From Podarcis erhardii (Eukaryota), in NCBI GenBank assembly GCA_964252035.1, contig OZ176201.1: a DNA stretch of 64,000 bases; one strand, written 5' to 3'. Position numbers and translations under genes: made by a program. Positions 6,274-54,720 of the stretch are shown in pieces; position 1 is the stretch's first letter, and the number at the start of each line of letters is the position of its first letter. Under the pieces are notes generated by a model, which worked only from the letters and a program-made list of their open reading frames with translations, ran no database searches and was not told where the DNA came from.

Positions 6274-7917
6274 GTAACATGCACTCTTCCTGAACTCTTC
6301 GCGGTCTCACTTGTAGTTTAAAAAAGCCAATGAACCACTTTCCAGAGACAAGATCTGTCACTCCTTTACAGGAGATAGGAGGGTGCAAAGATACATATAT
6401 TTCTCAAGGACATGACCAACAAGCTCAGGTGCATGAGGAGTTTGCTCTGGTGTTCAGGAAGGCAAGCGAGCAAGTTGGGCATTGGCTCTCATTCTTTCAT
6501 TTCAGTACTGATGATCCAAACTTCATGCAGAGTAATGGCAAGAATTCCTGGAACTGACAGGAGCTGGGAAGGGACAAGGTTCATGACATAACTTCTTAGA
6601 AGCCTAGTTTAGGATGAGCAGCTAAAGGAAAACAGGCACAATGAAATATACACTTCATCCTTGGAGTGAGATGGTGGCAGTGGAGTAGACATTCATCTTG
6701 TCCTGCTGGCCAGGATTAGTATTGTGGTGAGGCTGCTTTCTGATTGCTGTGAGTAGGACTATTATTGTGGATTTGCCTTGAAGGAATGCAGGAGCACAGT
6801 TTGGTTTTGAACAAAAAACGGTTCATCATTAAAAGATGGTTTCTTGGTTCTCTCTGGAATAATTTGAATGGGGGGGGGCAAAGAAGAGTGGCACCTGAAA
6901 GTCCAACAAATAAGTTATAGCATAAACTTTCATAGTCTAAGGGCATAAGTTATTGTGGACTATGAAAGCTTATGCCATGAGGCATTTCTTAAGTCTTCTA
7001 CAAGACTCTTTCTGCTGCAACAGTCTGATATGGCAAAATATGTGCATTTGAGAAAGAAACAGAAGAGCAACTGGAGTTTTGGAGACAGAGAAAGCTTGGA
7101 GCTGTAAGCTAACAGCAGCTGAGGAGGAAGAAAGGTGTGTTTCTCTGGCAATCTGGTGTGGGAACAATGGACTGGCTTTGTTGCATGTTAAGCTGTCTGC
7201 CTCCACCTATGCTTGACTTGCATATATTTATTTAATACATAATTTGTTTTGCAAACTGCAGTACAATAAACAACAACAACAAAACAAAAAGTTGGAAATT
7301 TCTCATGCATCATTGTTACAGGATATAATGGGGGTGGGGATAAGAATTAAAAAATAATAATTAAAACAACTATCAGATATAGCCTCTCCAAAATACAGCC
7401 CAGGTAGTTGGATAAATTTGTAAATAAACCCAAATATTACAAAACATCCTAAGTTGCAAACGACACTTCTATCCTGCCTGTTGTGCATCTAACAGTATGT
7501 TGTGTTGGTTCAGGCTGGTCTTTGCTCAGATGGAACAGAAAATCTTCACTTAGGAAGCATTACACATGTTCCAATCTACTCATTGTTGGCACAGAGTCCT
7601 CATAGGCAAACAGCTGTGCTTCTAGAACTCACAGGTCCAGCTTCCTGAAAGTCTCCCACCCTGTATCACTGGTGCCAACTGTGTATTTGTGTGGTTGTCC
7701 CTCCCCTCCCCAGAAAAGGGTTATGCCAGTATTCAGTGGCATGTGATTATAAAATAAGAGTTCTTGTGTGGCTCAGTCTAACCCATAGGCTGAGGTTCTT
7801 GAAGACTTTTTGCCTATATATTCATCATTTGTGTGAAGTTATAACAGTTGGCCTAAGTCTCTCTTTTTTAAAAAAGATGTCTACCTTGCAGTGTACCAGC
7901 AGATCTATCTCTTGCAG

Positions 7918-8034
7918 ATTTGTGTGAAAGGTCCAAACGTTTTCAAGGGCTACCTGAAAGATAGAGAGAAAACCACGGAAGCTTTAGACAAGGATGGATG
8001 GCTTCATACTGGGGATGTCGGGAAGTGGTTGCAC
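7918..8034 (+). CDS. ACSL6: ACSL6 exon ([39 protein letters not shown]), 117 nt, phase 0-0
   Basis: ctcttgcag acceptor and gtatgt donor. Contains the DGWLHTGD fatty acyl-CoA synthetase signature. Confidence 0.97.
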
Positions 8035-8164
8035 GTATGTACTGAAATGCTACCTTTGCATACTAAGATTGCAGGTTTACAAGCCCCTCTGACCAAAGGA
8101 ATAAGTGAATTAGACATTGATGTGTATGTCAGATCATGAGTATAGTGGTGGAAAAAAATTACTA

Positions 8165-9737: not shown

Positions 9738-9922
9738 CTCTGACTCTTGTGATAAGCAGAAGCTGCTGTATCATTGTTTGAGGAATGGGGTCAAAGGGCA
9801 AAGAACTTGACAAGCACTCTTATTTAGGAAGCACAGATAAGAGAGCACAGCAAAATTCAAGGGATTAAGATGGGTTTGCTGTGTCACAAATACAGTCCCC
9901 AATTTTATCTGTATCGTTGCAG

Positions 9923-10024
9923 GCCTTCCTGGTGGGGATTGTTGTACCTGATGCTGAAATCATGCCAGCCTGGGCCAAGAAAAGAGGCTTTGATGGAACT
10001 TTTGCAGAGCTCTGTAAAAATGCG
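9923..10024 (+). CDS. ACSL6: ACSL6 exon (AFLVGIVVPDAEIMPAWAKKRGFDGTFAELCKNA), 102 nt, phase 0-0
   Basis: cgttgcag acceptor and gtaaat donor. Homologous to human AFLVGIVVPDPEVMPSWAQKRGIEGTYADLCTNK. Confidence 0.96.
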
Positions 10025-11059
10025 GTAAATTGCTTATGTACATGTTCCTGTGCATTATTAAATTGGCAATTCAGTGCCAATTTGGGGTGTGTGTGTGTGT
10101 GTGTACAGACAAACATAGATTATAATTATAATTGGTAGATCAGAATTTGCCAGTGCACTGAAAGAGCCTTATGGCGAATGATGCAATATGATAAGCTGAA
10201 AGGCCAACTTCAATGTTACATTAAAAGCAGCCTTCCATATTCTGTTGCCCCCAAGATGTTTTGGACTCCCAACTCCCAGCAGCTCTAGCCAGCATGGCCA
10301 ATGGTCAGGGATGATGGGAACTGTAATCCAGAATATCAGGAGAGCACCAGGATGGGAATGGCTGAATTAAAACAATTCAGCTAATGTGCTTGGATCTGAC
10401 TGTGACTTTTTCTTTAGAAAAAAAGCAGCTATAGGGGGCTCTGATCTGGATCAGATCCAAAGCACAGAAGGAGGGAGCTTAACTATGCCCTGTTTTCCTG
10501 CTAATAATAATGCCCCCAAATAACATATTTACTGCTTTGGATAGTTTTCAGGCAAAAAGGGAAAAGGGGTTTTAATCCTGGTCAGGATCCCCCACAGCTT
10601 CTTTTCATAAAGAAAGGCACAGCCAAGTCCAAAGCACAGTAGTTAAAACTGCTTTTAACATAATGTGTAATTCTGGCTCTAAGTAGCTAGGTGATTACTG
10701 TGTTAAGAGACTGGGACATCTGTTAGAAGGATTCCATTGGATAAGCAAAGCTCTGTCCTGTAACGAGCTAGTATAACATATTGGGTTTTTTCCACTTTCT
10801 TTATCAGTACTGTTCCATTGCTACAAGATGACATCTATTTTTTTGCACAGTGAGATATGCTTTTGTTTCATTATGTTTTTGGGGGCTTGGAATGTCTGAG
10901 CCAGCACCAAATCATGTGATTTCTCTGCTGTTGCCTAGACAAGATAAAGATTGCAGTAGTGTTCCAGAAAGAAGACAGCAAAGCTACTAAAGAACAGGTT
11001 TTATTTCTTCTGTGGGTGTTCCAGCACATTTACCTTTGGTGGAAGCCATAAGTGAAGGA

Positions 11060-12391: not shown

Positions 12392-12463
12392 GAGCTCAAA
12401 AAAGCAATAATGGAAGATATGGTGCAGTTAGGGAAAGAGAGTGGACTTCATTCGTTTGAACAG
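12392..12463 (+). CDS. ACSL6: ACSL6 exon (ELKKAIMEDMVQLGKESGLHSFEQ), 72 nt, phase 0-0
   Basis: ttgcttag acceptor and gtaaat donor. The GLHSFEQ motif favours ACSL6 over its paralogues. Confidence 0.96.
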
Positions 12464-35417: not shown

Positions 35418-35558
35418 GAATGACATTACCCACAGGTGTTTCACATTTTCTGCTGCAGTGTTTGGATGAAGAGTCTTCTCTGTGCTCTAATACAGAATCT
35501 AGTGATGGAGCAAGTACTTATTCATCACCTGAGATATTCAGAGATGAAAACACATTAG
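35418..35558 (+). CDS. MEIKIN: MEIKIN exon (G-MTLPTGVSHFLLQCLDEESSLCSNTESSDGASTYSSPEIFRDENTL-E), 141 nt, phase 1-1
   Basis: tttccag acceptor and gtatgc donor. SSPEIFR matches human PSPELFR. Confidence 0.9.
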
Positions 35559-35730
35559 GTATGCATGCTTATGCTCTACATGTGGGAGTGACCGTTTGAG
35601 AAAAGCATGTGTGCTCTCATCTATATTTTTTAGTTGCAAATGTATGGCAGAAATTGGGAACCTGTGGCCCTCCAGATGTTGCTTTCTTTTCAGCCCCAGC
35701 AAGCATGGCCAATAGTCAGGGATCATAGTA

Positions 35731-35878
35731 TCTTAGAATTTGTAGAGTTTGAAGGGATCACGAGGGTCATCTAGTCCAACCCCCTGTAATGCAGGAATAT
35801 TTTGCCCAATATGGGGCTCAAACCCATGACCCTGAGATCAGGGTCTAGTAGACTCATGGTCTACTGACTCAGCTGTCC
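35731..35878 (-). mobile_element. tRNA-head/CR1-tail SINE (Squam3-type), antisense
   Basis: The reverse complement reads tRNA-like ...gagtctactagacc...gggtcatgggtttgagcccca followed by the CR1 tail gttggactagatgaccc...aaactctac. Confidence 0.8.
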
Positions 35879-36362
35879 CAGAGAGGAAAAACATTTGGAG
35901 AGCAGTTGACTCCACATCCCTGCTGTAAGGCCTGACTACATTGCATTTTTATTTGCTTAATCAAGCCCATCACATAGTCAAGTGGGGAAAGCTTTGCTAA
36001 TTGATTGTTGCCAAATGCCTCTTAACTTGGTCAGAGAATGACCATTTAATCCAAGGCTAGAGTTCAGAGTGTCCTTGGCAATTCTTGACCTATACTACAT
36101 TTTTTTGATTGGCTTAACCCCAGCACTGGGCAATCAACCATGCATCGATTGCTGAACAAGTGCTTCAAATTACATTCTCAATTATTGTTTGTAGGGAGGG
36201 GATCTAAAGTCTTTACACTTTATGCCATAATAAGCCAACTGAAATCTGTGGAGGTTCTTCAAGAGTGATCAGCTTACAAATGCAATGTTAGCAAACTTAG
36301 CATTGTAGAACTTCAAGCATTTCAGAAAGACGGTAGCAACCATATTGTGTTATGTGTTTTAG

Positions 36363-36479
36363 AAAAAAGCACTGGTCAAGAAGAATGCCTTGGGCACAGG
36401 AATTCAACCCTCTTGGATACCAGCAAAGCCATCAACATAGACAAGATGCCACATGTGCCAAATCTTTCACAGATATTGG
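36363..36479 (+). CDS. MEIKIN: MEIKIN exon (E-KSTGQEECLGHRNSTLLDTSKAINIDKMPHVPNLSQIL), 117 nt, phase 1-1
   Basis: gtgttttag acceptor and gtaacc donor. RNSTLLDTSKAINIDKMP matches human KNSTLLDTSKAVAIEKAP, the most diagnostic MEIKIN block. Confidence 0.93.
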
Positions 36480-37112
36480 GTAACCTTGAACATGTTACAT
36501 AAGTGTTTGGTTGCCAGCTTGAGTTTAAACCTTTCTTTGATGCAGAGGGCAGCAAATGTGGGTGTCGGGAACTTGAGTTGGTGCTTCCACACTCCAAGTG
36601 GCAGAGTTGGATGTCTGGAAATAAAGCAGCTTGATGATGAGACCATGGGAAGACTAAAATGGTTTGAAGAGGAAAGATTAAGCATCCTAGACACGATTGG
36701 TCAAGCTACAGGGTGGGGCAAATTCGTATATCCTTTTCTTCAGTCCGTCTCCTGTGTCAAACCAGCATCTATTCAGGGCTGCCCCAGCTGCCCAGCGACT
36801 TACTATAACAACTTCATGGTTAGCTCCAGCACCTATTTTTCTTGGGGAAGAAGCAATCGGAACAAATGTCAATTTGTTTTTCTGTGAATTGACGTTTGTT
36901 CCAGTTCAGGGCTAAACAGCTGATTTTCCTGGGGAAAGCAAGGGGCAAGCGAAAATCCTCTTGGACCCATGCCTTGAAAGCACAGGACAAGCAGAAAAGC
37001 TCAGACCTGTGCTTTCTGGGCATGGGGCAAGCAGAGGTGTGGATAAGCCCTATGTTGTGCTGTATTGCTCTAGCTTACCTTGATCACACTCTTCACATTT
37101 GATCTCTTCTAG

Positions 37113-37149
37113 AAACCACTTTAGGAAAAAAAGACCAGAGCATTACAAG
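37113..37149 (+). CDS. MEIKIN: Probable MEIKIN small exon (E-TTLGKKDQSIT-R), 37 nt, phase 1-2
   Basis: gatctcttctag acceptor and gtaata donor. Needed together with 38057-38091 to keep frame; little homology. Confidence 0.55.
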
Positions 37150-37169
37150 GTAATACCTAAGCAAAATAT

Positions 37170-37691
37170 TGTTACATGCCACCCCAGTCTCCGAGCGGTG
37201 TGAGATTCCAGGGGTTCCAGGTGCTTGCCCAGGGATTGTGTTTCTAAAGAAATGAGCCACAGTGGAGACTGTGATGTCTTTAGGGTATACGGTTTATTTA
37301 CACATACTGTATATACAACCTGAGTCTACGATGGAGGGGTTCAAAGCATTAACACTCCAAAAGGTTCTTGCCCCTCCCATGGCCATAGTCTTGGATGCCT
37401 GCAAAAATCAGCCATCACCCTCTGGTCAGCTTGCTATGTTTAACAGACTGCCACTTTTCTCTCGGGCTTGCTGACACAGCCGGCAACTATTTTTTCTCCA
37501 ACCAACGTCATCCCCAACTGCAATCCTAAAAACAACTGCTCTCCTTCCAGTTCTAAAACTCTACTTCAGAGGCTTTTGTCTTTCTAGCCAATTATGAGTT
37601 GAGAGAGGGGGTCGAGTATCTGACACCCAGGAATTATAAGCAGGGTCCAGGAATTAGAAATGGAATTCAGGCACCCCACAAACGCATAACA
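37170..37691 (-). mobile_element. Solo LTR, 522 bp (Gypsy/ERV-type)
   Basis: TGTTA...TAACA termini, 4-bp TSD ATAT (37166-37169 / 37692-37695), and a minus-strand AATAAA near 37293-37298. Confidence 0.88.
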
Positions 37692-38056
37692 ATATTTTTT
37701 TGTGTGACTGCTCTCTTTTTTAGAGACAGTATATATGCAACTGCTTGGAGTAATGACTCTGATTGTGGCAGCTACATAAAGCACTGCCTTCGCCATGGCC
37801 ATTAAGAAGCAACAGCTGTAGCCAGGGAAATCCCCTCTCGCAAAGAGAACACATTGGTGGAGCATCCCATTATGGCAGAATTGAAGATACAGTATTAATT
37901 AGTCTGTTGACTCATTAGCCAGTGTATTTTCACTAAATTTGAAGTGATATTAGCCAGTTAGGAAAGAAATCACTTGGATCTTAATGGAAATTTTGTGAGC
38001 AGCTAAGCATATAACTACTTTCTTACTTTCGCCTTTTTATTTTCTTACTGTGGCAG

Positions 38057-38091
38057 GCTATCAAAGCAGAAATCACGTTCTGAATTGACAG
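38057..38091 (+). CDS. MEIKIN: Probable MEIKIN small exon (R-LSKQKSRSELT-G), 35 nt, phase 2-1
   Basis: tttcttactgtggcag acceptor and a weaker CAG|gtgttt donor. Only the phase-2 frame is open to this donor, and it bridges the neighbouring phases. Confidence 0.5.
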
Positions 38092-38217
38092 GTGTTTCAG
38101 CTGTAGTTGCAGGTAAATAATGTTATTTAAAACAAACAAGTTGCAAGTTATGTGACACGACTAGCAGATTTGTTTTTGCTGTGTGCTTTTAAAATAACAA
38201 GTTCAGGCCACAGGGCC

Positions 38218-38732
38218 CAGGGGCGCCGACTTATAAAAAATATTGGGGGGGCGGGGGCCCATACCGACTTATAAAAAATATTGGGGGGGCCCAAGACCTC
38301 CAAACCGCTGCTGCTGGGGGAACGAAAGGGGCGAGCCCCGGGCTGCCCCGACCTTAAGTGAACCTGTGAGGGCCCGCCCTTTGCGGCAGCCAATTGGCTG
38401 CCGCCGTGAGCGGTGAATATTAATGAGCTAAGGGGAATCCCCGCTTCTCGCGGGGCTGACGCCAGCTCCGCGAGATTGTTGATGGGTCGAGAGTCCGCAA
38501 CCCCACCCCCTCTCTAGATCGGGAGTGGCTTTGTTTTAACTCATTACTGAATGTATTTTAAAAGGTAACTATCGTCAAACAAGGAAAATAAAAAATACCA
38601 ACATAATTTTGTGATTTTACAAAGCATAATATAACTAATAATTTTCTTAAATTATTGGGGGGGCAGAGCCCCCCCAAACGAATTTTTGAGGGGCCTCGGG
38701 CCCCCTCAGGCCCCATGGAGTCGGCGCCTATG
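38218..38732. mobile_element. hAT-type MITE, 515 bp, CpG-rich
   Basis: TIRs caggggcgccgact / agtcggcgcctatg, a perfect 8-bp TSD acagggcc, and an internal duplication of ccgacttataaaaaatattggggggg. Confidence 0.92.
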
Positions 38733-39047
38733 ACAGGGCCTGTGTATAATGATGACCCTAAAAGGTTGCCCCTCTCTGCCTGGCTTGGTGGCCCTCCTGG
38801 CATTGAAATTCCTTTAACTCAAACAGCTGCAGAGCCGAATAAGAGGTGAACATGGAAGCCAGCACTAAAGCAGAATGAGGGAAGTAAACATGCCATTGCC
38901 TCTTCCTCCTCAGTCAGGCAATTAGAACGCTGCAAGGCATGGCAGGAACACTGACTGCAAACAGGGAAAATGCTGGCGGTTTTTGAAAACAAAACTGCAA
39001 AATACAGTGGCTCCTCCTGGCTGCAGACTGCACCCCAGTCCTTCCTG

Positions 39048-39063
39048 GTTACCATGGCAACTG
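39048..39063. promoter_or_regulatory. Consensus RFX X-box GTTACCATGGCAAC overlapping a MYB core CAACTG
   Basis: Direct motif match in a MEIKIN intron, 335 nt upstream of the 39396 exon. Confidence 0.45.
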
Positions 39064-39395
39064 TGTTTGTGGACTCTTGAAAAGTGATTCATCCAGAGTA
39101 GCTCACCCCCACCCCATTTTCATACTTGCAGACACACATACCATTTAAGAATCTCATTCCACTAAAAAAAAGGGAAAGAAAGAGAAAATTGAGTGAAAAG
39201 GACAAGCCACATAGTGTTAAGGGGTGGTTAAAAGCTCAGAAATTGAGGCCGAATGAATGGCTCTGCAGATCAGCCAGTAAATGACTGCAGATCAGCCCAT
39301 GACCCCCAAACTGCAGCACAGAATTGAGACAGAGAAGTAGCTGGACCAATTTGCGCAGTCAAATTGATGAATTATTTTTCGTCCTGTTTTCTCAG

Positions 39396-39490
39396 GGAAA
39401 CAAGTGTGCAAAATTTTGCCTGCAAAGGAAAAGACACCTGAATTGCAATCATTTGGAGCCTCCTTATTGCCTCAAAAACAAACAAAAAAG
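39396..39490 (+). CDS. MEIKIN: MEIKIN exon (G-KQVCKILPAKEKTPELQSFGASLLPQKQTKK), 95 nt, phase 1-0
   Basis: Very strong ttttcgtcctgttttctcag acceptor and gtgatg donor. VCKILPAKEKTPE...TKK resembles human ACEILLAEKTCPSTPEKTKKK. Confidence 0.8.
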
Positions 39491-39557
39491 GTGATGAGTT
39501 TAATGTTCATAGGTTGCCATGTGTGAATTGGGATAGTGGTGTGGTGGACAACTAACT

Positions 39558-39686
39558 GTAGTGGCTCGGTAGAGTATGAGAGACTTAATCTCAGAGCCGT
39601 AGGCCATGTTGGGGAGAAGATGCCTGCATTGTTGGGGTTGGACTACATGACCCACATGGTCCCTTCCAACTCTACAATTCTATAAT
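39558..39686 (+). mobile_element. tRNA-head/CR1-tail SINE (Squam3-type)
   Basis: gctcggtagagtatgaga...gttggactacatgacccacatggtcccttccaactctacaattcta. Confidence 0.8.
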
Positions 39687-41181
39687 TTTATCCATCCTAC
39701 CTATAGATGAATCTGGACAGGAGTGTGATAATAATCTCCAGTTGACTGTAGTCCTTTCATTCATTTATTTAAAAATCCAGTAAGGGGTCATCATGGGTTT
39801 ACTGGGGATGGGGCTGTAGTCCTGGCACACTGCCTGGCCCCATCTTTAGATGAGCATTCTGTTACCCTGGATCAGTCACCCTGACCAAGGGGCCAGGGCA
39901 GGAGCTCAAGCAGTAATCACATGATGGCACCTTAGTGCCAGTGCTGAGTGAAGGGGGCTACACTTGATGCTACAACTTCAAAATAGGTGCAGATCATGCT
40001 ATGGTGGCGCAGTGGGATTGTTAACCCTTCCCCTGCTTGCTGACTCTGCTCTCACAATTCTTCCCTGGTCCTCCCCATGCACTTGATGGGGCAGCTTTCT
40101 GTGTTCCATTGTAAATTGAATTATTTGGGTGGGTAATGATTAAGCACCTCTTGTTTTCTTACTTTTGAAGTTGGATTTCAAATTGATCTCGTGGAAATCA
40201 TTAGAACATCCAATTATAAAACAACAGAATTAAGGTTGTCCCTTCAACCTGTCTTAAATAGCCACCCAAATAAAAATGTTCTGGTAACTTAGGCTCTAAA
40301 TTTGGTAAACCTTTGGAGAAGGAAGCTGCTATACCTGAGGCATCCTCAAAAGAAACTCACTGGGCCCTAGTGGTACAAATTCATTTTTTTCATATATTAT
40401 AGAAAGGTGCTCTCGGCTTATCTTTCAACTAATCTTTTTACATAAAATGAAACCACTTTCCATCTAGAATCTCTAGTCAGTGGCTATTACTTGTTCTTCT
40501 AAGTGGGCGTGGTTATCTTTTCTTCTGTGTAACTCCTTAAATAGTTGACAGTGTGAGCTCAGTGAAGGCCAAAGTAGAGGGGCAAACCATTCCCTAGCAG
40601 AATCTTCTTTTTACAAATATGTTTGTGTGTGTGTGGTCTTGATCAAAATAAAGGGTGGCTTCTATTCATGAGAGGAAAGCTATTTGTTAAAAGAAAAAAC
40701 TGTGCAAAGACAAGCTTCATAGCAGATATCTAGATTGCTCCTCACATTGCCCTTTTGGCCTCACACTGAGATTTTGGAATTGGGAATTGTTAGTGTTGTG
40801 TGCTGAGATCATTTGGAACAAATGTCATGTTTTTAGTGAACATAAAATGGGTCAAGCACTCTATTGGCTGGCCATCTTCCAGGGAATGTCATGTGACCCT
40901 AGTCCTAATGAAGTATAGTGCAGCGACTAAAACCTTGATTTAAATCTCATCTCTCCTCTGCCATGAGATTACTAGTTGGTCTTCAGCAAGCTGCTATCAC
41001 TTTCTCCCTCCCCTGCAACATGAGGATAATAAGTGAGAGTTTCATCATTGCTATTGTTCATAAGAATTACTGAGATGTATACAAAGCACTTCAATTGCTC
41101 AAAATGCTATCTAAAACACTTTTAAGTACGTCCCTTACAAGTGTTGATGATACAACTATACAATTCTTCATGTTTCTGTAG

Positions 41182-41328
41182 ACTAAAGATCAGCAACCCA
41201 GGAAAATGAAGTGCACAAAAAGAGTACTGTTTTCCTCATCCTCATCCTCTCCTTATGTATTGGGTCCAGCCAAATTTTGTGGAATTGCAGCTGAAACCTT
41301 AGGCTCTGCACAGCCAGGTACTGGCATG
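41182..41328 (+). CDS. MEIKIN: Probable MEIKIN exon (TKDQQPRKMKCTKRVLFSSSSSSPYVLGPAKFCGIAAETLGSAQPGTGM), 147 nt, phase 0-0
   Basis: tgtttctgtag acceptor, perfect ATG|gtaagt donor and only frame 0 open. I recall no clear counterpart in human MEIKIN. Confidence 0.65.
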
Positions 41329-42085
41329 GTAAGTTGTTTTCAACTGCTAAGCTTTAAGGGAATGGGGAGTGCTGCACTTGGGGGTTAGAGAGCTGCTGCA
41401 AGGCTAAGAAGATGCAGAAACTATACTGAATGGTGCTGTGGTAAATTACAACGCAAAAGCTGGCAAAAGACAAAAGTGGCACTAGTTAAACTAGGTGTCT
41501 GGAGACCTGGGGTCTTTGGGATGTTGTTAGACCCCAGCTCCCATCGTCTCTAACTATTAGACACACTGGCTAGGGCTGATGGGAGGTTGGGTCATGTTAA
41601 ATAATATGGATAAGCCTTTTGTTGTCTGTGGGCTGAATTGGACGCATAAACCCTCTTCAAAATTGGGAGTCTCTCTTCCCTTTGGCATGGTTCCACTGAT
41701 AGGTGTACTTAGTGTTCAGGAAACAGGAATTAGTGCTTCAGTTGGCTTTTCCATACTTACCTTTTGCCCCCTGCTTTCTAGGCGCAGGTCTGGGCTTTAA
41801 AGCTCAGTGTCTGAGCACTCCCCCCCCCCCCACGCTTTCCCCAGGAAAACTCTCTCTTTAATGCAGAATCAAAACAAATGGCAATTCGGGTTTGGGGCAA
41901 ATTGCCATTCGCTCTGATTCAGTGATAAAGAGTGGGGCTTTGCAGGAAAAGAACTGGCGCAAAAATAAAAGTGCTTGGATGGGGGGCATTAAAGCACAGA
42001 CCTATGCCTAGAAACACAGCACAAAAGGAAGTCTCGATGAGCCCAGAGTCTTCTCAGACATGTTCACTTGACATTTTGCTTTCAG

Positions 42086-42142
42086 AATGAATTCAGAGTA
42101 TCCTGCGATACAACCAAAGCATTCTGTTTACAGGAAAATCTG
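42086..42142 (+). CDS. MEIKIN: Possible MEIKIN exon (NEFRVSCDTTKAFCLQENL), 57 nt, phase 0-0; an alternative longer donor lies at 42208
   Basis: Strong acattttgctttcag acceptor, weak gttatc donor and open frame 0. No recognisable homology. Confidence 0.35.
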
Positions 42143-42308
42143 GTTATCTGTTTACAATTGGAATTCTCTCTTATAAAGGAATTCTTGGAAACTGGATGGG
42201 GCTGCAGGTAGATGTTTTATATGAAGGAAATTAAATATTTTAAAATTAACAGCAGAACAGATTGCTCTTGCTATTTGCTTCTGATAAACTTTTATGTCTG
42301 TATCGGAG

Positions 42309-42598
42309 AGCAGTTCCAGAGCAGTGAACATAGGAAAGAATAAAGCACTATTAACAAGTGCAGCACTTCTACAGACAGAAGAATCATAGAATCATAGAGT
42401 TGGAAGAGACCACAAGGGCCATCGAGTCCAACCCCCTGCCAAGCAGGAAACACCATCAGAGCACTCCTGACATATGGTTGTCAAGCCTCTGCTTAAAGAC
42501 CTCCAAAGAAGGAGACTCCACCACACTCCTTGGCAGCAAATTCCACTGTCGAACAGCTCTTACTGTCAGGAAGTTCTTCCTAATGTTTAGGATTTAGA
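42309..42598 (+). pseudogene. MEIKIN: Apparently disabled MEIKIN exon: ancestral 81-nt phase 0-0 exon SSSRAVNIGKNKALLTSAALLQTE/GFR split by a 209-nt CR1 insertion
   Basis: Removing 42381-42589 restores 27 codons that align without gaps to human KTNSSTPGKKNRGLLTSTPSSETAGFV and run on into the next exon (LDSSSV vs IDLSSV). With the insert, a TAG stop falls at 42387-42389. The acceptor (GAG) and donor (gtttag) are weak. Confidence 0.72.
42381..42589 (-). mobile_element. Young 5'-truncated CR1 LINE 3' end (209 nt) inserted into a MEIKIN exon
   Basis: Begins gaatcatagaatcatagagttggaagagacc, the reverse complement of the CR1 (ATTCTATG)n tail. Ends tactgtcaggaagttcttcctaatgttta. An ag microhomology lies at both junctions. 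Confidence 0.92.
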
Positions 42599-43072
42599 GT
42601 TTAGCAAAATAAGCTCAAAACAAATGTAACCATTTGCATTTATTTCCATGTGAATGATACAATGCAATGAAATGTGTTTATATTTAAAACATCAGGGTCT
42701 TGGTGTTGTTGTTTGTATCAGTTTCAGACGGCCATTTTCAAACCAGTTTTGTGGGCCAAAAGCTATATCTCATTTATCTGCATAATTTCCTGGCTTTTGA
42801 AATGTTTCTCAGTACTGTATGTGCTAGTAGCTGTTTTGAAATCTGGGGGCCACTTTAGGCAATACCTTTCCTGTGTAGAAAATAATCATCATGCAGGAAG
42901 AAAAGTACTTGCATTCATATAAAAATTGCACATATATAACCGTTGCGGCTTCCAAATATGTGGCAAAATAGATGTCGGTACTGGTGGCCAGAGTGTAGGG
43001 GAAAAGCTGTACATCTCCACTTACCTGTTGTTCAAACCACAGACTAATTTCATTTCTTCCTCTTTACTATTT

Positions 43073-43119
43073 CATTATTATTGTTGTTATTACTATTATT
43101 ATTATTATTATTATTATTA
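43073..43119. repeat. (TAT)n microsatellite
   Basis: Read directly from the sequence. Confidence 0.95.
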
Positions 43120-43664
43120 AACATGCATCTCTTAAGATACACAAAAGGCTTAAAAGAGATAGCGATTGGCTTCGTGGTAGTGTGTGGATTTCACTCTCGG
43201 TCTACTCTGTTCAACGTGCCACACTAGCTTTTTTTAAAAGGAAAGAAAAGAAGCATAAACAAACTGTAAGATTGCCTTCATTTGCCTTATCAGTAGTTTA
43301 GGTCATCCTGAAGACAGATAAGTATATATTCAGAGATTCTCAAGTATTACACTAAATGTTCCGCTCAATTCAGAAAAGCAGTATGCAAGTGTCCTTTTGT
43401 CTTCCTTCTGACAAACAACTGCAGTTACCCCCTAGGGCTATATAGTAGTGTGCTGGGAGAGAGAAGCTGAGTGACCTGTGACAGTCACGTACTGACAAAG
43501 AGAAGGCTAATTGTCATTCTTCCTCATGACTCAGACAGGCTGTATATGCAAAGTATAGGATGCCAGGAGGAGACTCATTTGAAAGCTTGCTTCACCTTTT
43601 AGTTGAAGGATCTTAGATCCGTATTAATGAGAGTGCTGTACATTTTTGTTTTGTTTTGATATAG

Positions 43665-43790
43665 TTGGACTCTTCATCAGTGCATAAAGTCTCACTCGGT
43701 GAAGCTTCCTTGCCAAGCACAAGTCATTCAAATGTAAATTCAAAAGAAGTCATTCCTGCTTCCCTGTCTCCAGAAAGTGTTATTCATCAG
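43665..43790 (+). CDS. MEIKIN: MEIKIN exon (LDSSSVHKVSLGEASLPSTSHSNVNSKEVIPASLSPESVIHQ), 126 nt, phase 0-0
   Basis: ttttgatatag acceptor and CAG|gtcata donor. Aligns to human IDLSSVQKASFEELFPNVSNYVNSNEVVPVSSLQE. Confidence 0.85.
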
Positions 43791-44367
43791 GTCATATCTC
43801 TATTATATTTTTCCCTTTGCGGCAGTGCTAACCAAACATACTTAGGAGAGAGTGTGTGTACATACTTTTAAATGGACAGGGCAGGAGAACATGTCAAATG
43901 ATTCCAAAACTCAAAATTGCCTATCTATGGTAAGTGAGGATGGGATATTTAAATAGAAGTCATGTTGTGAGGCCTGTCCCAAACCTGTTTGACTATACAA
44001 GCAGCTGCCACAAAGAAAGTCCACTGTAGAGCTGCATTAAAAAAAAAAAAAGCACAATCAAGAATACGCAGTACTTGGCCACATCTTAATTATTTTAAAC
44101 GTTTAAGATGATGCACTTTTGCTGAAAAAATAGCAGAACCAGGGTTTTTTTCCACCCAGAGCCTGTAGGGGGTGAAAAGAGTATGTTTGTAGTGAACACA
44201 TTTAGGGCACCTTCCTGTTGGCGGAATGTCCTACAAAACATGGCTTTTTCCAGATATTAAAATTACTACCATAGTTTAGTGTTATCGTTAATGAGCAGCA
44301 CCAAGCCTTGAACTTGTGAACTCACTTCTCCTTTTCCTTTGGTACAGCCTAAAAGGGATTGGACGCA

Positions 44368-44736
44368 GGGACACATGTGGCACTGTGGTCTAAACCACTG
44401 AGCCTAGAGCTTGCCGATTGGAAGGTCGGTGGTTCGAACCCCCACGACGGGGTGAGCTCCCGTTGCTTGGTCCCTGCTCCTGCCAATCTAGCAGTTTGAA
44501 AGCACATCAAAGTGCAAGTAGATAAATAGGTTCCACTCCAGTGGGAAGGTAAATGGCATTTCTGTGTGCTGCTCTGGTTTTGCCAGAAGCGGCTTAGTCA
44601 TGCTGGCCACATGACCCGGAAAAACTGTCTGCGGACAAACATCAGCTCCCTTGGCCAGTAAAGCGAGATGAGCGCCGCAACCCCAGAGTCGTCTGCAACT
44701 GGACTTAACTGTCAGGGGTCCTTTACCTTTACCTTT
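44368..44736 (+). mobile_element. Full-length Sauria SINE, second subfamily
   Basis: tRNA-like head with ggttcgaacc, (ACCTTT)n tail, and an imperfect TSD taaaagggattgga / taaaggggactgga. Confidence 0.93.
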
Positions 44737-45091
44737 AAAGGGGACTGGAAGCTTTTGCTTTTAAACCAACCATAATTCCTCATTATGTTCAAACTCGAGA
44801 GTATGTTCGAGAGAAATGATGCTTTGTCAGGATCAAATATGATTTACAATCCTGACTTTCTGTCTAACTGTTTTTGAATTCTTGAGTTTCCTGAGTTAAG
44901 ATGCAAACAAAGGAACTCTGCTTTGCTTAAGTGGAAGCAAATGCTTCCAGGTTCTTCCTCGTGGCCCCTCTGGAGGAGAAAAGGGGAGAGGGAGCATGGG
45001 AGCCCAAAGCTATTGGTTCATAATTCAGTGCTGCATCAAAGCCCAGTCTATGCCTCGTTGGACGGCCTAAGTTTTGTTCCATTTCTTTCAG

Positions 45092-45215
45092 TGTCTACGT
45101 AACCCTCCAGAAATCTGCTGTATCATTAAAGCTTCACCAGGATCTAGACCACTGAAAGTTCTCCAACGCCCACTGAAAAGAAAAAGAGTGTTTCCCCCAC
45201 CAGGAGCAACTGAAG
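45092..45215 (+). CDS. MEIKIN: MEIKIN exon (CLRNPPEICCIIKASPGSRPLKVLQRPLKRKRVFPPPGATE-D), 124 nt, phase 0-1
   Basis: tttctttcag acceptor and gtaaag donor. EICCIIKASPGSR matches human EICCIIRTSPGTR in the C-terminal kinetochore/CENP-C-binding region. Confidence 0.93.
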
Positions 45216-45508
45216 GTAAAGCAGGACAGGGGATACAGAATATGTATTTATTGTGAGAACCCCTTACACAAGGAAGAGATTTGGGGTGGTTGTTGTTTGT
45301 TGTTGTAAACTGTTGAAGCTCCTGTTTTTGACTGAAGGAACCCTTACTTGTAAGTATAGGTTGTGCCACAAAACTTCCCTTCTGTTTGAATCTACAAAAC
45401 AAATTGCTGGGGATATGAAGGACATTGGGCTTGGACTTGGGTTGAAAGCCCAGCTCAGCCTAGAACCTGCCAGGTCACTGGGCAAATCATGATTACTCAA
45501 AGATTGTG

Positions 45509-53384: not shown

Positions 53385-54720
53385 AAAAACACGGGGGCGC
53401 GCGCTAATAAGTCAAGAGTCTAACTAACTGCGATCGTGACAAAATACAAATGGGGCAAGCTTTTATTTTTTTGCATCCCTGTTATTGACCCTTGTTGGGT
53501 TTGGGAGGGGGTGCAGATTCAAACATCTCCAGAGCGGCTCAGGAGTTCCACATCCTCCAGGGTCGTGGAATTCCAGTCGGGGTGTGGGGAGGAAAACCAG
53601 ACAAAACTCCACAAAGCCATCTCATCCAAAGCGCAAGGAGCACTCGGGCGTCCCCATTCCCGTCTCCGTCTTAGAATGCGGCCTGTTTCGTGTTCCGTAG
53701 GCTAAAACTCAGCGGATCGGAGGCGAAGTTGGCGGGAGAGCCCAGGCCGAGCGCCTCCCACTTTCCTCCCTTTCCCTTCCCTCTCCTTTCTTGCACCAAA
53801 ACATCCCCAAGCGCCGCCGCTCCACCAAAGCCAAGCAGGGATCGCCGTGTTCCCCACGTGGGCTGGGCCGGGCCGGGCCGCGCGGCCAATCGGCTGCCGG
53901 GAAGCCCGCGCGAAACCCCGCCCGCCCGCCCGCCTCCCCCTCCCTCTCCCGCCGCGGCTGCTCCAAGTGATTAATTTTTGTCATATGACTGTCACACCGA
54001 ATGGAGTCGGGTTCGCGGAACTAGCCGGCCGTCGCAGCTCGCGCGCGGGGAGGGGGGAGATCGCTGGCTGGCTGGCTGGCTGCTCCGGGCTTGGCCCCGC
54101 CGGGGCGAGAGCGGCGCGCTCCCAAAATGCCGCCCACACCCACCTTGTTGCAGAAGCTCTTCAACAAAAAGAGCGGCTTGGTCTCCCCCTGCAAGGAGCC
54201 CCGGGAAGAGTGCGTCTTCAGGTAAGGGGGCAGGCAGGCAGGCAGGCAGGGGGCGGGTGGGGCAGGGGCTTGGTTCCGGGGTCGGATCGCGGCGGGGCTG
54301 ATCCCCATCCCCTCTCTGGCTTGGGGGCACTGCTTGGCTTCCTTGCTGCTCTTTGCGGAGTCGCCCTCTTCGCCTACCAACCGAGCCACGCCGCCGATTC
54401 TTCTCTTCCCCATCCCTAACTTGACAGATCAGACTCTCCTTCTCTCCCAGCCTCCCCCCTTTTCCCCCCAGGAGGAGGCGGGGAGTTTTCCTGGCACCGT
54501 CTTGCCTTGGCGGCCACACAGCCGATCTGCCTCCCAGGCGGAAATCACACGGATGTGTGTCTTCGCCATGCGCCAAAACTTCGCGCAACGTTGTTTCTAC
54601 TTTTTGAGGAGCTCCCTCTCCCTCCTCTTCCTCCTACTCGTGCCTCTTTCGGCCTCGGAGGATCGTGGCCGTCACGTGCGTGCAGAGCCGAGTACCCCCC
54701 CCCCATCACTTTCTTGAGTT
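53385..54720 (+). promoter_or_regulatory. CpG-island promoter of FNIP1 with CCAAT box (53886-53890) and GC boxes (about 53917-53934)
   Basis: Abrupt rise in GC and CpG density spanning exon 1; motifs read directly from the sequence. Confidence 0.9.
54127..54221 (+). CDS. FNIP1: FNIP1 first coding exon (MPPTPTLLQKLFNKKSGLVSPCKEPREECVF-S), 95 nt, phase 2 end; exon 2 lies beyond the window
   Basis: Matches human [31 protein letters not shown]. Kozak aaaATG, AG|gtaagg donor and conserved synteny. Confidence 0.93.

What the first reader, a model, noticed from the sequence alone, without database searches (positions are those of the whole stretch)
42309..42598. The MEIKIN exon carrying the PLK1 docking motif looks dead: STP changed to SAA, CR1 insertion, in-frame stop
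Seen in the sequence: deleting the 209-nt CR1 3' end (42381-42589) rebuilds an 81-nt frame, SSSRAVNIGKNKALLTSAALLQTEGFR. Joined to the next exon it reads LLTSAALLQTEGFRLDSSSVHKVSLGE. This aligns without gaps to remembered human LLTSTPSSETAGFVIDLSSVQKASFEE. With the insert a TAG appears at 42387, and no consensus donor lies before it. The acceptor (GAG) and donor (gtttag) are also poor. Established knowledge: this S-T-P is the polo-box docking site by which MEIKIN brings PLK1 to meiosis-I kinetochores for mono-orientation and cohesin protection. Inference: the flanking exons are phase 0, so the exon can be skipped in frame. The loss of STP suggests constraint relaxed before the young CR1 landed. 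This lizard lineage may therefore recruit PLK1 another way, or have altered meiosis. That would be especially relevant if the species is a hybrid or parthenogenetic lacertid, which cannot be told from the window.
Basis: partly seen in the sequence, partly recalled or inferred. Interest (0 to 1): 0.85.

Follow-up and report, generated by a model that had tools for sequence, protein, structure and literature searches.

The report
Young CR1 insert in MEIKIN intron
The supposed dead exon of the meiosis gene MEIKIN is most likely ordinary intron that recently received a CR1 retroposon fragment, while the gene itself is spliced normally around it in close relatives and looks intact.

Summary
The letters are as described. 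The frame from 42309 reads SSSRAVNIGKNKALLTSAALLQTEES, then TAG at 42387. A CR1-type 3' end lies antisense in it, and both splice sites are poor. The gene is MEIKIN, and the flanking exons 41182-41328 and 43665-43790 are real. RNA contigs of two closely related lizards (about 1.5-2% diverged) join 41328 directly to 43665 in frame.

The "exon" itself is doubtful. Its acceptor and donor score no better than random AG and GT. The 81-nt frame needs an excision of exactly 42381-42589. CR1 likeness runs 42380-42591, and a relative's DNA contig stops being colinear at 42603. That fits a 223-nt insert, after which the frame ends ...LLQTEAK-TAA with no donor.

The claim about PLK1 docking is also overstated. 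Human Meikin has three STP motifs, and mutating all three only reduces PLK1 binding. The STP motif has been described as poorly conserved. The lizard mRNA keeps an S-S-P, the separase site and the PLK1-site cluster.

Verdict: an ordinary young retroposon insertion in an intron (about 0.7). A true relic exon remains possible (about 0.2). I could not fetch orthologous proteins, so the match to the human exon was never tested directly.

The parts
35418..35558 (+). MEIKIN exon (inferred) carrying the separase site S-P-E-I-F-R
   Evidence: Acceptor 8.4 and donor 6.5 in my splice model, with an open frame. The motif matches human S149 plus ELFR 151-154 as described by Maier et al.. A feature search of this exon returns Meikin clusters as its top three hits.
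36363..36479 (+). MEIKIN exon (inferred) with N-S-T-L-L-D-T-S ... N-L-S
   Evidence: The phase fits the exon that ends at 35558. The Ser/Thr spacing equals that of human S175, T176, T180, S181 and S196, named as PLK1-type sites.
37113..37149 (+). Possible 37-nt MEIKIN exon (weakly inferred)
   Evidence: It is the best-scoring of the 14 exon chains that keep the frame open between 36479 and 38057; none joins the 36363 exon directly to 38057. No RNA was laid here.
38057..38112 (+). Probable 56-nt MEIKIN exon
   Evidence: Acceptor 4.5 and donor 8.8. It ends in CAG. The mRNA contig of relative B matches the three intron letters CAG in front of 39396, as expected if its upstream exon ends in CAG.
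39396..39490 (+). MEIKIN exon, seen in RNA of relative B
   Evidence: Contig record 17 (1511 nt, depth 63) has a GT..AG joint to 41182.
41182..41328 (+). MEIKIN exon, 49 codons, holding the S-S-P motif (SSSSSSPY)
   Evidence: Laid RNA contigs of relatives A and B. Translation. Acceptor and donor rank at the 97.5th and 99.7th percentile.
42309..42379 (+). The claimed exon's left part: an open intronic frame ...ALLTSAALLQTE with a gAG acceptor
   Evidence: It is not part of the RNA contigs of relatives A and B, which join 41328 to 43665.
42380..42591 (-). 5'-truncated CR1-type 3' end (hairpin plus two octamers at 42380-42398)
   Evidence: The left edge is set by two other copies in the window and by joints to 42380. 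The right edge is set by other copies that run on after 42591. Fold. Depth in this stretch is tens of thousands of times single copy.
42387..42389 (+). TAG in the claimed frame, supplied by the CR1 octamer
42592..42602 (.). 11 extra letters at the CR1 5' junction (ATTTAGAGTTT), part of a 7-nt periodic run 42585-42605; they hold most of the 'GFR' codons (42590-42598, the first two letters lying in the CR1 end) and the first letters of the claimed donor
   Evidence: Sequence. Relative F's contig is colinear only from 42603. Empty-site model. Inferred, not shown directly.
43665..43790 (+). MEIKIN exon, 42 codons (LDSSSVHK...)
   Evidence: The joint 41328 to 43665 is seen in relative B (depth 63) and relative A (depth 3.3). 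A further joint runs to 45092. Translation.
45092..45215 (+). MEIKIN exon (CLRNPPEI...KRKRVF...)
   Evidence: Piece of relative B's contig record 17. Splice scores.

Best explanation
The stretch 42309-42598 is intron of an intact MEIKIN gene, not a dead exon. A 5'-truncated CR1-type 3' end was copied into the 2.3-kb intron between exons 41182-41328 and 43665-43790, antisense to the gene. It is 212 nt long, probably with 11 extra junction letters. The insertion is recent: it happened after this genome's line split from a relative about 2% diverged. The spliceosome joins 41328 to 43665, as RNA of two relatives shows. The protein therefore never contains this segment.

The open frame with LLTS...T is a short chance frame of 33 codons. 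The 'GFR + GT' ending that made it look like the human STP exon comes from the CR1 junction itself.

The lizard MEIKIN keeps the separase site, the cluster of PLK1-type sites and one S-S-P polo-box core, so PLK1 docking is expected to work in the usual way.

Shown: the sequence facts, the splice joints in relatives, the CR1 edges and the weak splice sites.
Inferred: the empty-site bounds, the youth of the insert and PLK1 binding.
For: RNA:
- Contig record 17 of relative B (1511 nt, depth 63) runs 39396-39490 | 41182-41328 | 43665-43790 | 45092-45215 with GT..AG joints.
- A contig of relative A shows the same 41328-to-43665 joint.

Splice sites:
- The claimed acceptor ranks at the 47th percentile of all AG and the donor at the 13th percentile of all GT. 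The real neighbours rank at the 82nd to 99.7th percentile.

CR1 edges:
- 42380 and 42591 (loose ends).
- Hairpin plus octamers at the element's 3' end (PMC4316615).

Empty site:
- Relative F's 642-nt contig is laid only on 42603-43067, although 146 of its letters extend leftwards. Other F contigs are laid straight into repeats.
- Removing 42380-42602 gives ...LLQTEAK-TAA with no donor. The score against the remembered human 14-mer falls from 27 to 11, and 337 of 127,472 windows do as well.

Youth of the insert:
- No position in the CR1 was listed where nearly all other copies differ from the window. The repeat at 44.3-44.8 kb has five such positions.

Gene intact:
- All RNA-supported exons are open with good splice sites.
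- Relative B differs only by an in-frame 6-nt Ser-Ser insertion, one amino-acid change and two silent changes in exon 41182-41328.

Gene identity:
- SPEIFR and the S/T spacing, Meikin clusters in the feature search, and ACSL6 exons upstream with FNIP1 exon 1 downstream.
Against: - It also lies in the right intron, strand and phase. By chance that placement has a probability of a few percent.
- The remembered peptide fits published numbering. If its Thr is T276, the next exon starts at 286, and 42 codons later comes 328, the start of the human kinetochore-targeting fragment. The memory is therefore probably genuine.
- The empty-site model rests on one contig boundary in one relative. The left piece of that contig was not listed, so it was not seen directly.
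- No RNA of the window's own organism was available.
- Many joints (191) were not shown, so a rare isoform that uses 42309 cannot be excluded.
Confidence: 0.7

Rival explanations
1. Relic exon. An ancestral 78-81-nt phase-0 exon, homologous to the human exon end that carries the T276 STP motif, lost its splice sites and its STP in this lizard group. It was then hit by a CR1. The mRNA skips it in frame.
For: - 7 of 14 identities to the remembered human peptide, the top score of 62,265 windows.
- Excising 209 or 212 nt keeps the frame.
- A single change at position -3 (G to a pyrimidine) would lift the acceptor to about the 90th percentile (my arithmetic).
- The region between the separase site and the C-terminal domain varies in length among mammals. 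Mouse has 54 more residues than human, by the numbering.
Against: - Relative F's contig boundary at 42603 suggests the GFR-plus-donor letters belong to the insert.
- The donor GTTTAG scores worse than most random GT.
- A relic dead long enough to lose both splice sites would not be expected to keep 50% identity to human, when even the live neighbouring exon keeps only about 54%.
- The human peptide was not checked against any database.
Confidence: 0.2
2. Recently disabled docking exon with consequences for meiosis. The exon was in use until the CR1 landed in this species. Its loss changes how PLK1 reaches meiosis-I kinetochores.
For: Only the presence of the CR1 and the TAG.
Against: - Two relatives already skip the stretch, at depth 63 in one of them.
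- SAA stands in place of STP, and the weak splice sites lie outside the insert.
- In human, the STP triple mutant still binds PLK1.
- The STP motif is described as poorly conserved.
- An S-S-P and the PLK1-site cluster are retained.
Confidence: 0.04
3. The insert is an assembly artefact or a polymorphism of the sequenced individual.
For: Relative F appears to lack it. The insert is near the majority form of its family, so it could still be segregating.
Against: Contigs built from reads of organism E, the likely source of the window, hold 0.89-0.95 of the sampled words of 41100-43900. This is not independent evidence, and it does not single out the junction words.
Confidence: 0.06

Closest known systems
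Mammalian MEIKIN (Kim et al. 2015; Maier et al., bioRxiv 10.1101/2020.11.29.402537)
   Same: - Position between ACSL6 and FNIP1 (the human gene order is from my own memory).
- Separase site S-P-E-x-F-R.
- Ser/Thr spacing equal to human S175, T176, T180, S181 and S196.
- A disordered, Ser-rich middle part with a polo-box core motif.
- An exon that starts (L/I)D.SSV.
   Different: - In the exons read here (35418-45215; the N-terminal and last exons were not modelled) the lizard mRNA has no S-T-P. It has S-S-P once after the separase site (exon 41182-41328).
- Human has three STP motifs.
- Two small extra exons are likely (37113-37149 and 38057-38112).
- The C-terminal CENP-C-binding part was not compared.
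5'-truncated CR1 LINE insertions of amniotes (Suh et al. 2015, PMC4316615)
   Same: - Hairpin plus octamer microsatellite at the 3' end.
- Severe 5' truncation.
- Very high copy number.
   Different: - Eleven extra letters at the 5' junction.
- It could equally be the tail of one of this genome's SINEs that carry a CR1-type tail. That lead comes from earlier scan notes and was not tested.
Exon loss or pseudo-exon caused by a transposable-element insertion
   Same: An open frame in an intron, interrupted by a retroposon that supplies a stop.
   Different: There is no evidence that the frame was ever spliced. The splice sites score at random level, and the 3' end of the 'exon' probably arose with the insertion.

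Membership tests
MEIKIN orthologue (the gene as a whole) | Separase cleavage motif ExxR with a Cdk-type Ser-Pro at P6/P5 | tested here: met
   S-P-E-I-F-R in exon 35418-35558, against human S149 and ELFR 151-154.
MEIKIN orthologue (the gene as a whole) | Cluster of PLK1-type sites with the spacing of human S175/T176/T180/S181/S196 | tested here: met
   N-S-T-L-L-D-T-S, then N-L-S 21 residues after the first Ser. Only the spacing was compared, not the human letters.
MEIKIN orthologue (the gene as a whole) | Polo-box core S-[pS/pT]-P in the part C-terminal of the separase site | tested here: met
   SSSSSSPY in the RNA-supported exon 41182-41328. It is S-S-P, not S-T-P. Binding was not tested.
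MEIKIN orthologue (the gene as a whole) | Profile match to Pfam PF27928 (Meikin) | tested here: inconclusive
   Single exons gave no hit in the local Pfam copy. The feature search of one exon put three Meikin clusters first at 0.72-0.73, which counts only as a lead.
MEIKIN orthologue (the gene as a whole) | C-terminal CENP-C-binding domain | not tested
   Exon 45092-45215 is in the mRNA. No orthologue sequence was available for comparison, and the last exon was not found.
STP-bearing MEIKIN exon (the claim for 42309-42598) | Spliced into mRNA | tested here: not met
   Relatives A and B join 41328 to 43665. The window's own organism had no RNA runs.
STP-bearing MEIKIN exon (the claim for 42309-42598) | Recognisable acceptor and donor | tested here: not met
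   47th and 13th percentile of all AG and GT in the window. The model weights are from memory.
STP-bearing MEIKIN exon (the claim for 42309-42598) | S-T-P motif | tested here: not met
   The frame reads S-A-A.
STP-bearing MEIKIN exon (the claim for 42309-42598) | Homology to the exon of other vertebrates | not testable with these tools
A single-exon search of the representative library found nothing relevant. The length rule of the homologue search excludes full-length proteins for exon-sized queries. A spliced query has no reference.
CR1 LINE 3' end | Octamer microsatellite at the 3' terminus, preceded by a hairpin | tested here: met
   On the minus strand, the stem GGTTGGA...TCCAACT is followed by CTATGATT twice. 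The feature is described in PMC4316615.
CR1 LINE 3' end | 5' truncation relative to longer copies | tested here: met
   Other copies in relatives' contigs continue past 42591 with TGGAATCTTC....
CR1 LINE 3' end | LINE body rather than a SINE with a CR1-type tail | not tested
   No family consensus was available. Earlier scan notes mention SINEs with CR1-type tails in this genome.

The most novel reading that the evidence does not exclude
The stretch is a genuine relic of an STP-bearing exon that other amniotes keep. This lizard genus would then run MEIKIN with a single S-S-P and the PLK1 self-priming sites. That would be a natural test of how much the STP motifs matter for PLK1 recruitment at meiosis-I kinetochores.
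Probability: 0.2. Interest if true: 0.45.

Novelty: not a real feature. Interest (0 to 1): 0.15.

Why it matters
That would bear on how Meikin works. The evidence instead points to an ordinary event: a young retroposon fragment in an intron of a gene that is spliced and conserved as usual.

The useful results are:
- an RNA-supported partial exon map of lizard MEIKIN;
- the observation that its only polo-box core after the separase site is S-S-P;
- a caution that frames rebuilt by excising a repeat depend on the exact excision bounds.

Tried and rejected
1. Exhaustive representative search with exon 41182-41328. The only hit was a spurious Ala/Pro-rich repeat protein of 1267 aa with no resemblance to MEIKIN.
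2. Pfam scans of eight exon peptides: no hits.
3. PDB sequence searches with three exons: no Meikin entry.
4. Feature search of the candidate frame: blank. The true exon 41182-41328 was also blank, so this test has no power.
5. Scaffold alignment. I aligned the exons to a long stop-free window translation to get a query long enough for the homologue search (A1). All exons stacked on the same columns, so I ran no further search on it. Exon-sized queries cannot reach full-length proteins, and a spliced query would have had to be typed.
6. Colinear residue numbering. I first argued from it that the lizard mRNA leaves no room for an extra exon. I withdrew this after finding two probable small exons at 37113-37149 and 38057-38112.
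7. Search for an internal duplicate of the candidate in the window: nothing significant.
8. Terminal exon of MEIKIN: not identified.
9. Kim et al. 2015 is not held in the paper library, and the Maier preprint has no held supplements.
10. Whether relatives A and B carry the CR1 at this site could not be read from the single reads call.

Full report
**What is in the sequence**

From 42309 the + strand reads SSSRAVNIGKNKALLTSAALLQTEES, followed by TAG at 42387-42389. The nine letters 42590-42598 read GFR. The neighbouring frames 41182-41328 (49 codons) and 43665-43790 (42 codons) are open and are multiples of three.

**The insert**

- The block begins GAATCATAGAATCATAGAGTTGGAAGAGACC.
- Read on the minus strand, it ends with a stem (GGTTGGA...TCCAACT) followed by two octamers CTATGATT.
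- This is the conserved hairpin-plus-octamer 3' end of CR1 retroposons, most of which are heavily 5'-truncated (PMC4316615).
- Two other partial copies in the window start to match at 42380-42382.
- In the reads experiment, copies elsewhere in the relatives' contigs join at 42380. They run on beyond 42591 with TGGAATCTTCTTTC....
- CR1 likeness is therefore 42380-42591, 212 nt and antisense to the gene.
- Earlier notes of this scan mention SINEs with CR1-type tails in this genome. Whether this fragment comes from a LINE or from such a SINE was not tested.

**The gene is MEIKIN**

- ACSL6-like exons lie upstream at about 7.8-12.5 kb ([13 protein letters not shown]..., IVVPDAEIMPAWAKKRGF...).
- An FNIP1-like first exon (MPPTPTLLQKLFNKKSGL) lies at about 54.1 kb, all on the + strand.
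- That MEIKIN sits between these two genes in human is from my own memory.
- Exon 35418-35558 encodes S-P-E-I-F-R. Maier et al. describe the vertebrate-conserved separase site of human Meikin as ELFR 151-154, with a Cdk-type Ser at P6, residue 149.
- Exon 36363-36479 encodes N-S-T-L-L-D-T-S and, 21 residues after the first Ser, N-L-S. This is the spacing of the human PLK1-type sites S175, T176, T180, S181 and S196.
- A protein-feature search with exon 35420-35557 put three 'meiosis-specific kinetochore protein' clusters (Pfam PF27928, Meikin) first, at scores of 0.72-0.73. That counts only as a lead.

**How the gene is spliced**

No RNA runs of the window's own organism were offered. RNA-type runs of two close relatives hold the upstream exon. 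I laid two runs of relative A, one of relative B and a DNA run of relative F on 39350-45250.

- One contig of B (1511 nt, depth 63) consists of 39396-39490 | 41182-41328 | 43665-43790 | 45092-45215, with GT..AG joints.
- A 246-nt contig of A shows the same joint from 41328 to 43665.
- A differs from the window at 2 of about 145 exon letters.
- B differs at 3 letters plus an in-frame TCCTCA (two more Ser) in the poly-Ser run.
- F differs at about 2% in unique DNA.
- In these near relatives the mature mRNA therefore goes straight across the claimed exon, in frame.
- Among the joints shown, none uses 42309 or 42598. Another 191 joints were not listed, so a rare isoform is not excluded.

**Is the stretch an exon at all?**

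I scored splice sites with a simple position-weight model whose weights I took from memory.

| Site | Percentile |
|---|---|
| Claimed acceptor (gAG) | 47th of all AG in the window |
| Claimed donor (GTTTAG) | 13th of all GT in the window |
| Exon 41182-41328, acceptor / donor | 97.5 / 99.7 |
| Exon 43665-43790, acceptor / donor | 93.5 / 82 |

The open frame is only 33 codons between stops, which is unremarkable.

**The 81-nt reconstruction depends on the excision**

- It needs 42381-42589 to be removed, which keeps GGATTTAGA (GFR) and the GT behind it.
- Those letters are part of a 7-nt periodic run, GTTTAGG ATTTAGA GTTTAGC (42585-42605). The run bridges the CR1 end and the flank.
- Relative F gives the only look at the site in another genome. 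Its 642-nt contig is laid on 42603-43067. A further 146 of its letters extend to the left without being laid colinearly.
- Other F contigs are laid straight into repeats. The meaning of the record coordinates for minus-strand records was checked on record 1.
- The simplest reading is that F lacks 42380-42602: 223 nt, made of the CR1 piece plus 11 extra junction letters.
- With that empty site the frame reads ...LLTSAALLQTEAK, then TAA, and there is no donor.
- This is an inference from one contig boundary. The left piece of the contig was not listed.

**How good is the match to human?**

| Excision | Score of the candidate | Comparison |
|---|---|---|
| 42380-42591 (212 nt) | Ungapped match lost | |
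| 42380-42602 (223 nt) | 11 | 337 of 127,472 windows do as well |

If its Thr is T276, the next exon starts at 286, and 42 codons later comes 328, the start of the human kinetochore-targeting fragment. The memory is therefore probably genuine. I put the relic-exon reading at about 0.2.

**Age of the insert**

- No CR1 position was listed at which nearly all other copies differ from the window. The repeat at 44.3-44.8 kb shows five such positions.
- Together with the probable absence in F, this points to a recent insertion.
- The relatives skip the stretch whether or not they carry the CR1. The SAA codons and the weak splice sites lie outside the insert. The CR1 is therefore not what keeps this segment out of the mRNA.

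**The functional inference**

- Human Meikin has three STP motifs (T251, T264, T276). Mutating all three reduces PLK1 binding but does not abolish it. Binding is lost only when five PLK1-type sites are mutated as well.
- A review notes that the meikin STP motif 'is not well conserved' (PMC4683677).
- The lizard mRNA keeps S-S-P, within the S-[pS/pT]-P polo-box core quoted, in exon 41182-41328. It also keeps the PLK1-type cluster and the separase site.
- The gene is open across all RNA-supported exons. It differs from relative B mainly by an in-frame indel and silent changes.
- Nothing suggests an altered meiosis. Whether the species is hybrid or parthenogenetic cannot be told here.

**Limits**

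- I could not obtain MEIKIN sequences of other species. The one exhaustive search, with a single exon, found nothing relevant.
- The homologue search accepts only proteins of similar length to the query, and a spliced query has no reference.
- Direct homology of 42309-42379 to an exon elsewhere therefore remains untested.

**Verdict**

This is an ordinary young CR1-type insertion in an intron of an intact, normally spliced MEIKIN gene (about 0.7). The 'dead STP exon' is most likely an artefact of frame reading and of the chosen excision bounds. A real relic exon remains possible (about 0.2).

Noticed in passing
window 7837-8136, 9869-10135, 12392-12463 (+): Open frames with acyl-CoA synthetase (ACSL6-like) peptides: the 3' exons of the upstream neighbouring gene.
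   Followed up: no
window 53700-54700 (+): A G+C-rich island with an FNIP1-like first coding exon (MPPTPTLLQKLFNKKSGL) at about 54.1 kb. It also holds the longest stop-free frames of the window (237 and 213 codons), which are compositional.
   Followed up: no
window 41232-41253: The poly-Ser run in front of the S-S-P varies between species. Relative B has six more letters (TCCTCA, two Ser) and a Tyr-to-Asp change (41254 T>G) right after the Pro.
   Followed up: partly
window 41280: The window has T where relatives A, B and F all have C. The change is silent (Cys codon) and private to the window's line.
   Followed up: partly
window 44275-44865: A second very high-copy repeat, with summed contig depth up to 3.6 million in relative F. 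At five positions (44408, 44439, 44468, 44487, 44532) nearly all other copies differ from the window copy, so it looks older than the CR1 insert.
   Followed up: no
window 35727-35797 (+) and 39634-39687 (-): Two further partial copies of the same CR1-type 3' end in MEIKIN introns, about 80% like the insert.
   Followed up: partly
window 43074-43119: An (ATT)15 microsatellite in the same intron. Contigs of the relatives break there.
   Followed up: no
window 37113-37149 and 38057-38112 (+): Two small probable MEIKIN exons (37 and 56 nt) that together keep the frame. The second has strong splice sites and fits the CAG end seen in relative B's contig. They would make the lizard protein about 31 residues longer than a model that joins 36479 directly to 39396.
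   Followed up: partly
window 42585-42605: A 7-nt periodic run, GTTTAGG ATTTAGA GTTTAGC, at the CR1 5' junction. It looks like slippage or template switching during integration.
   Followed up: partly
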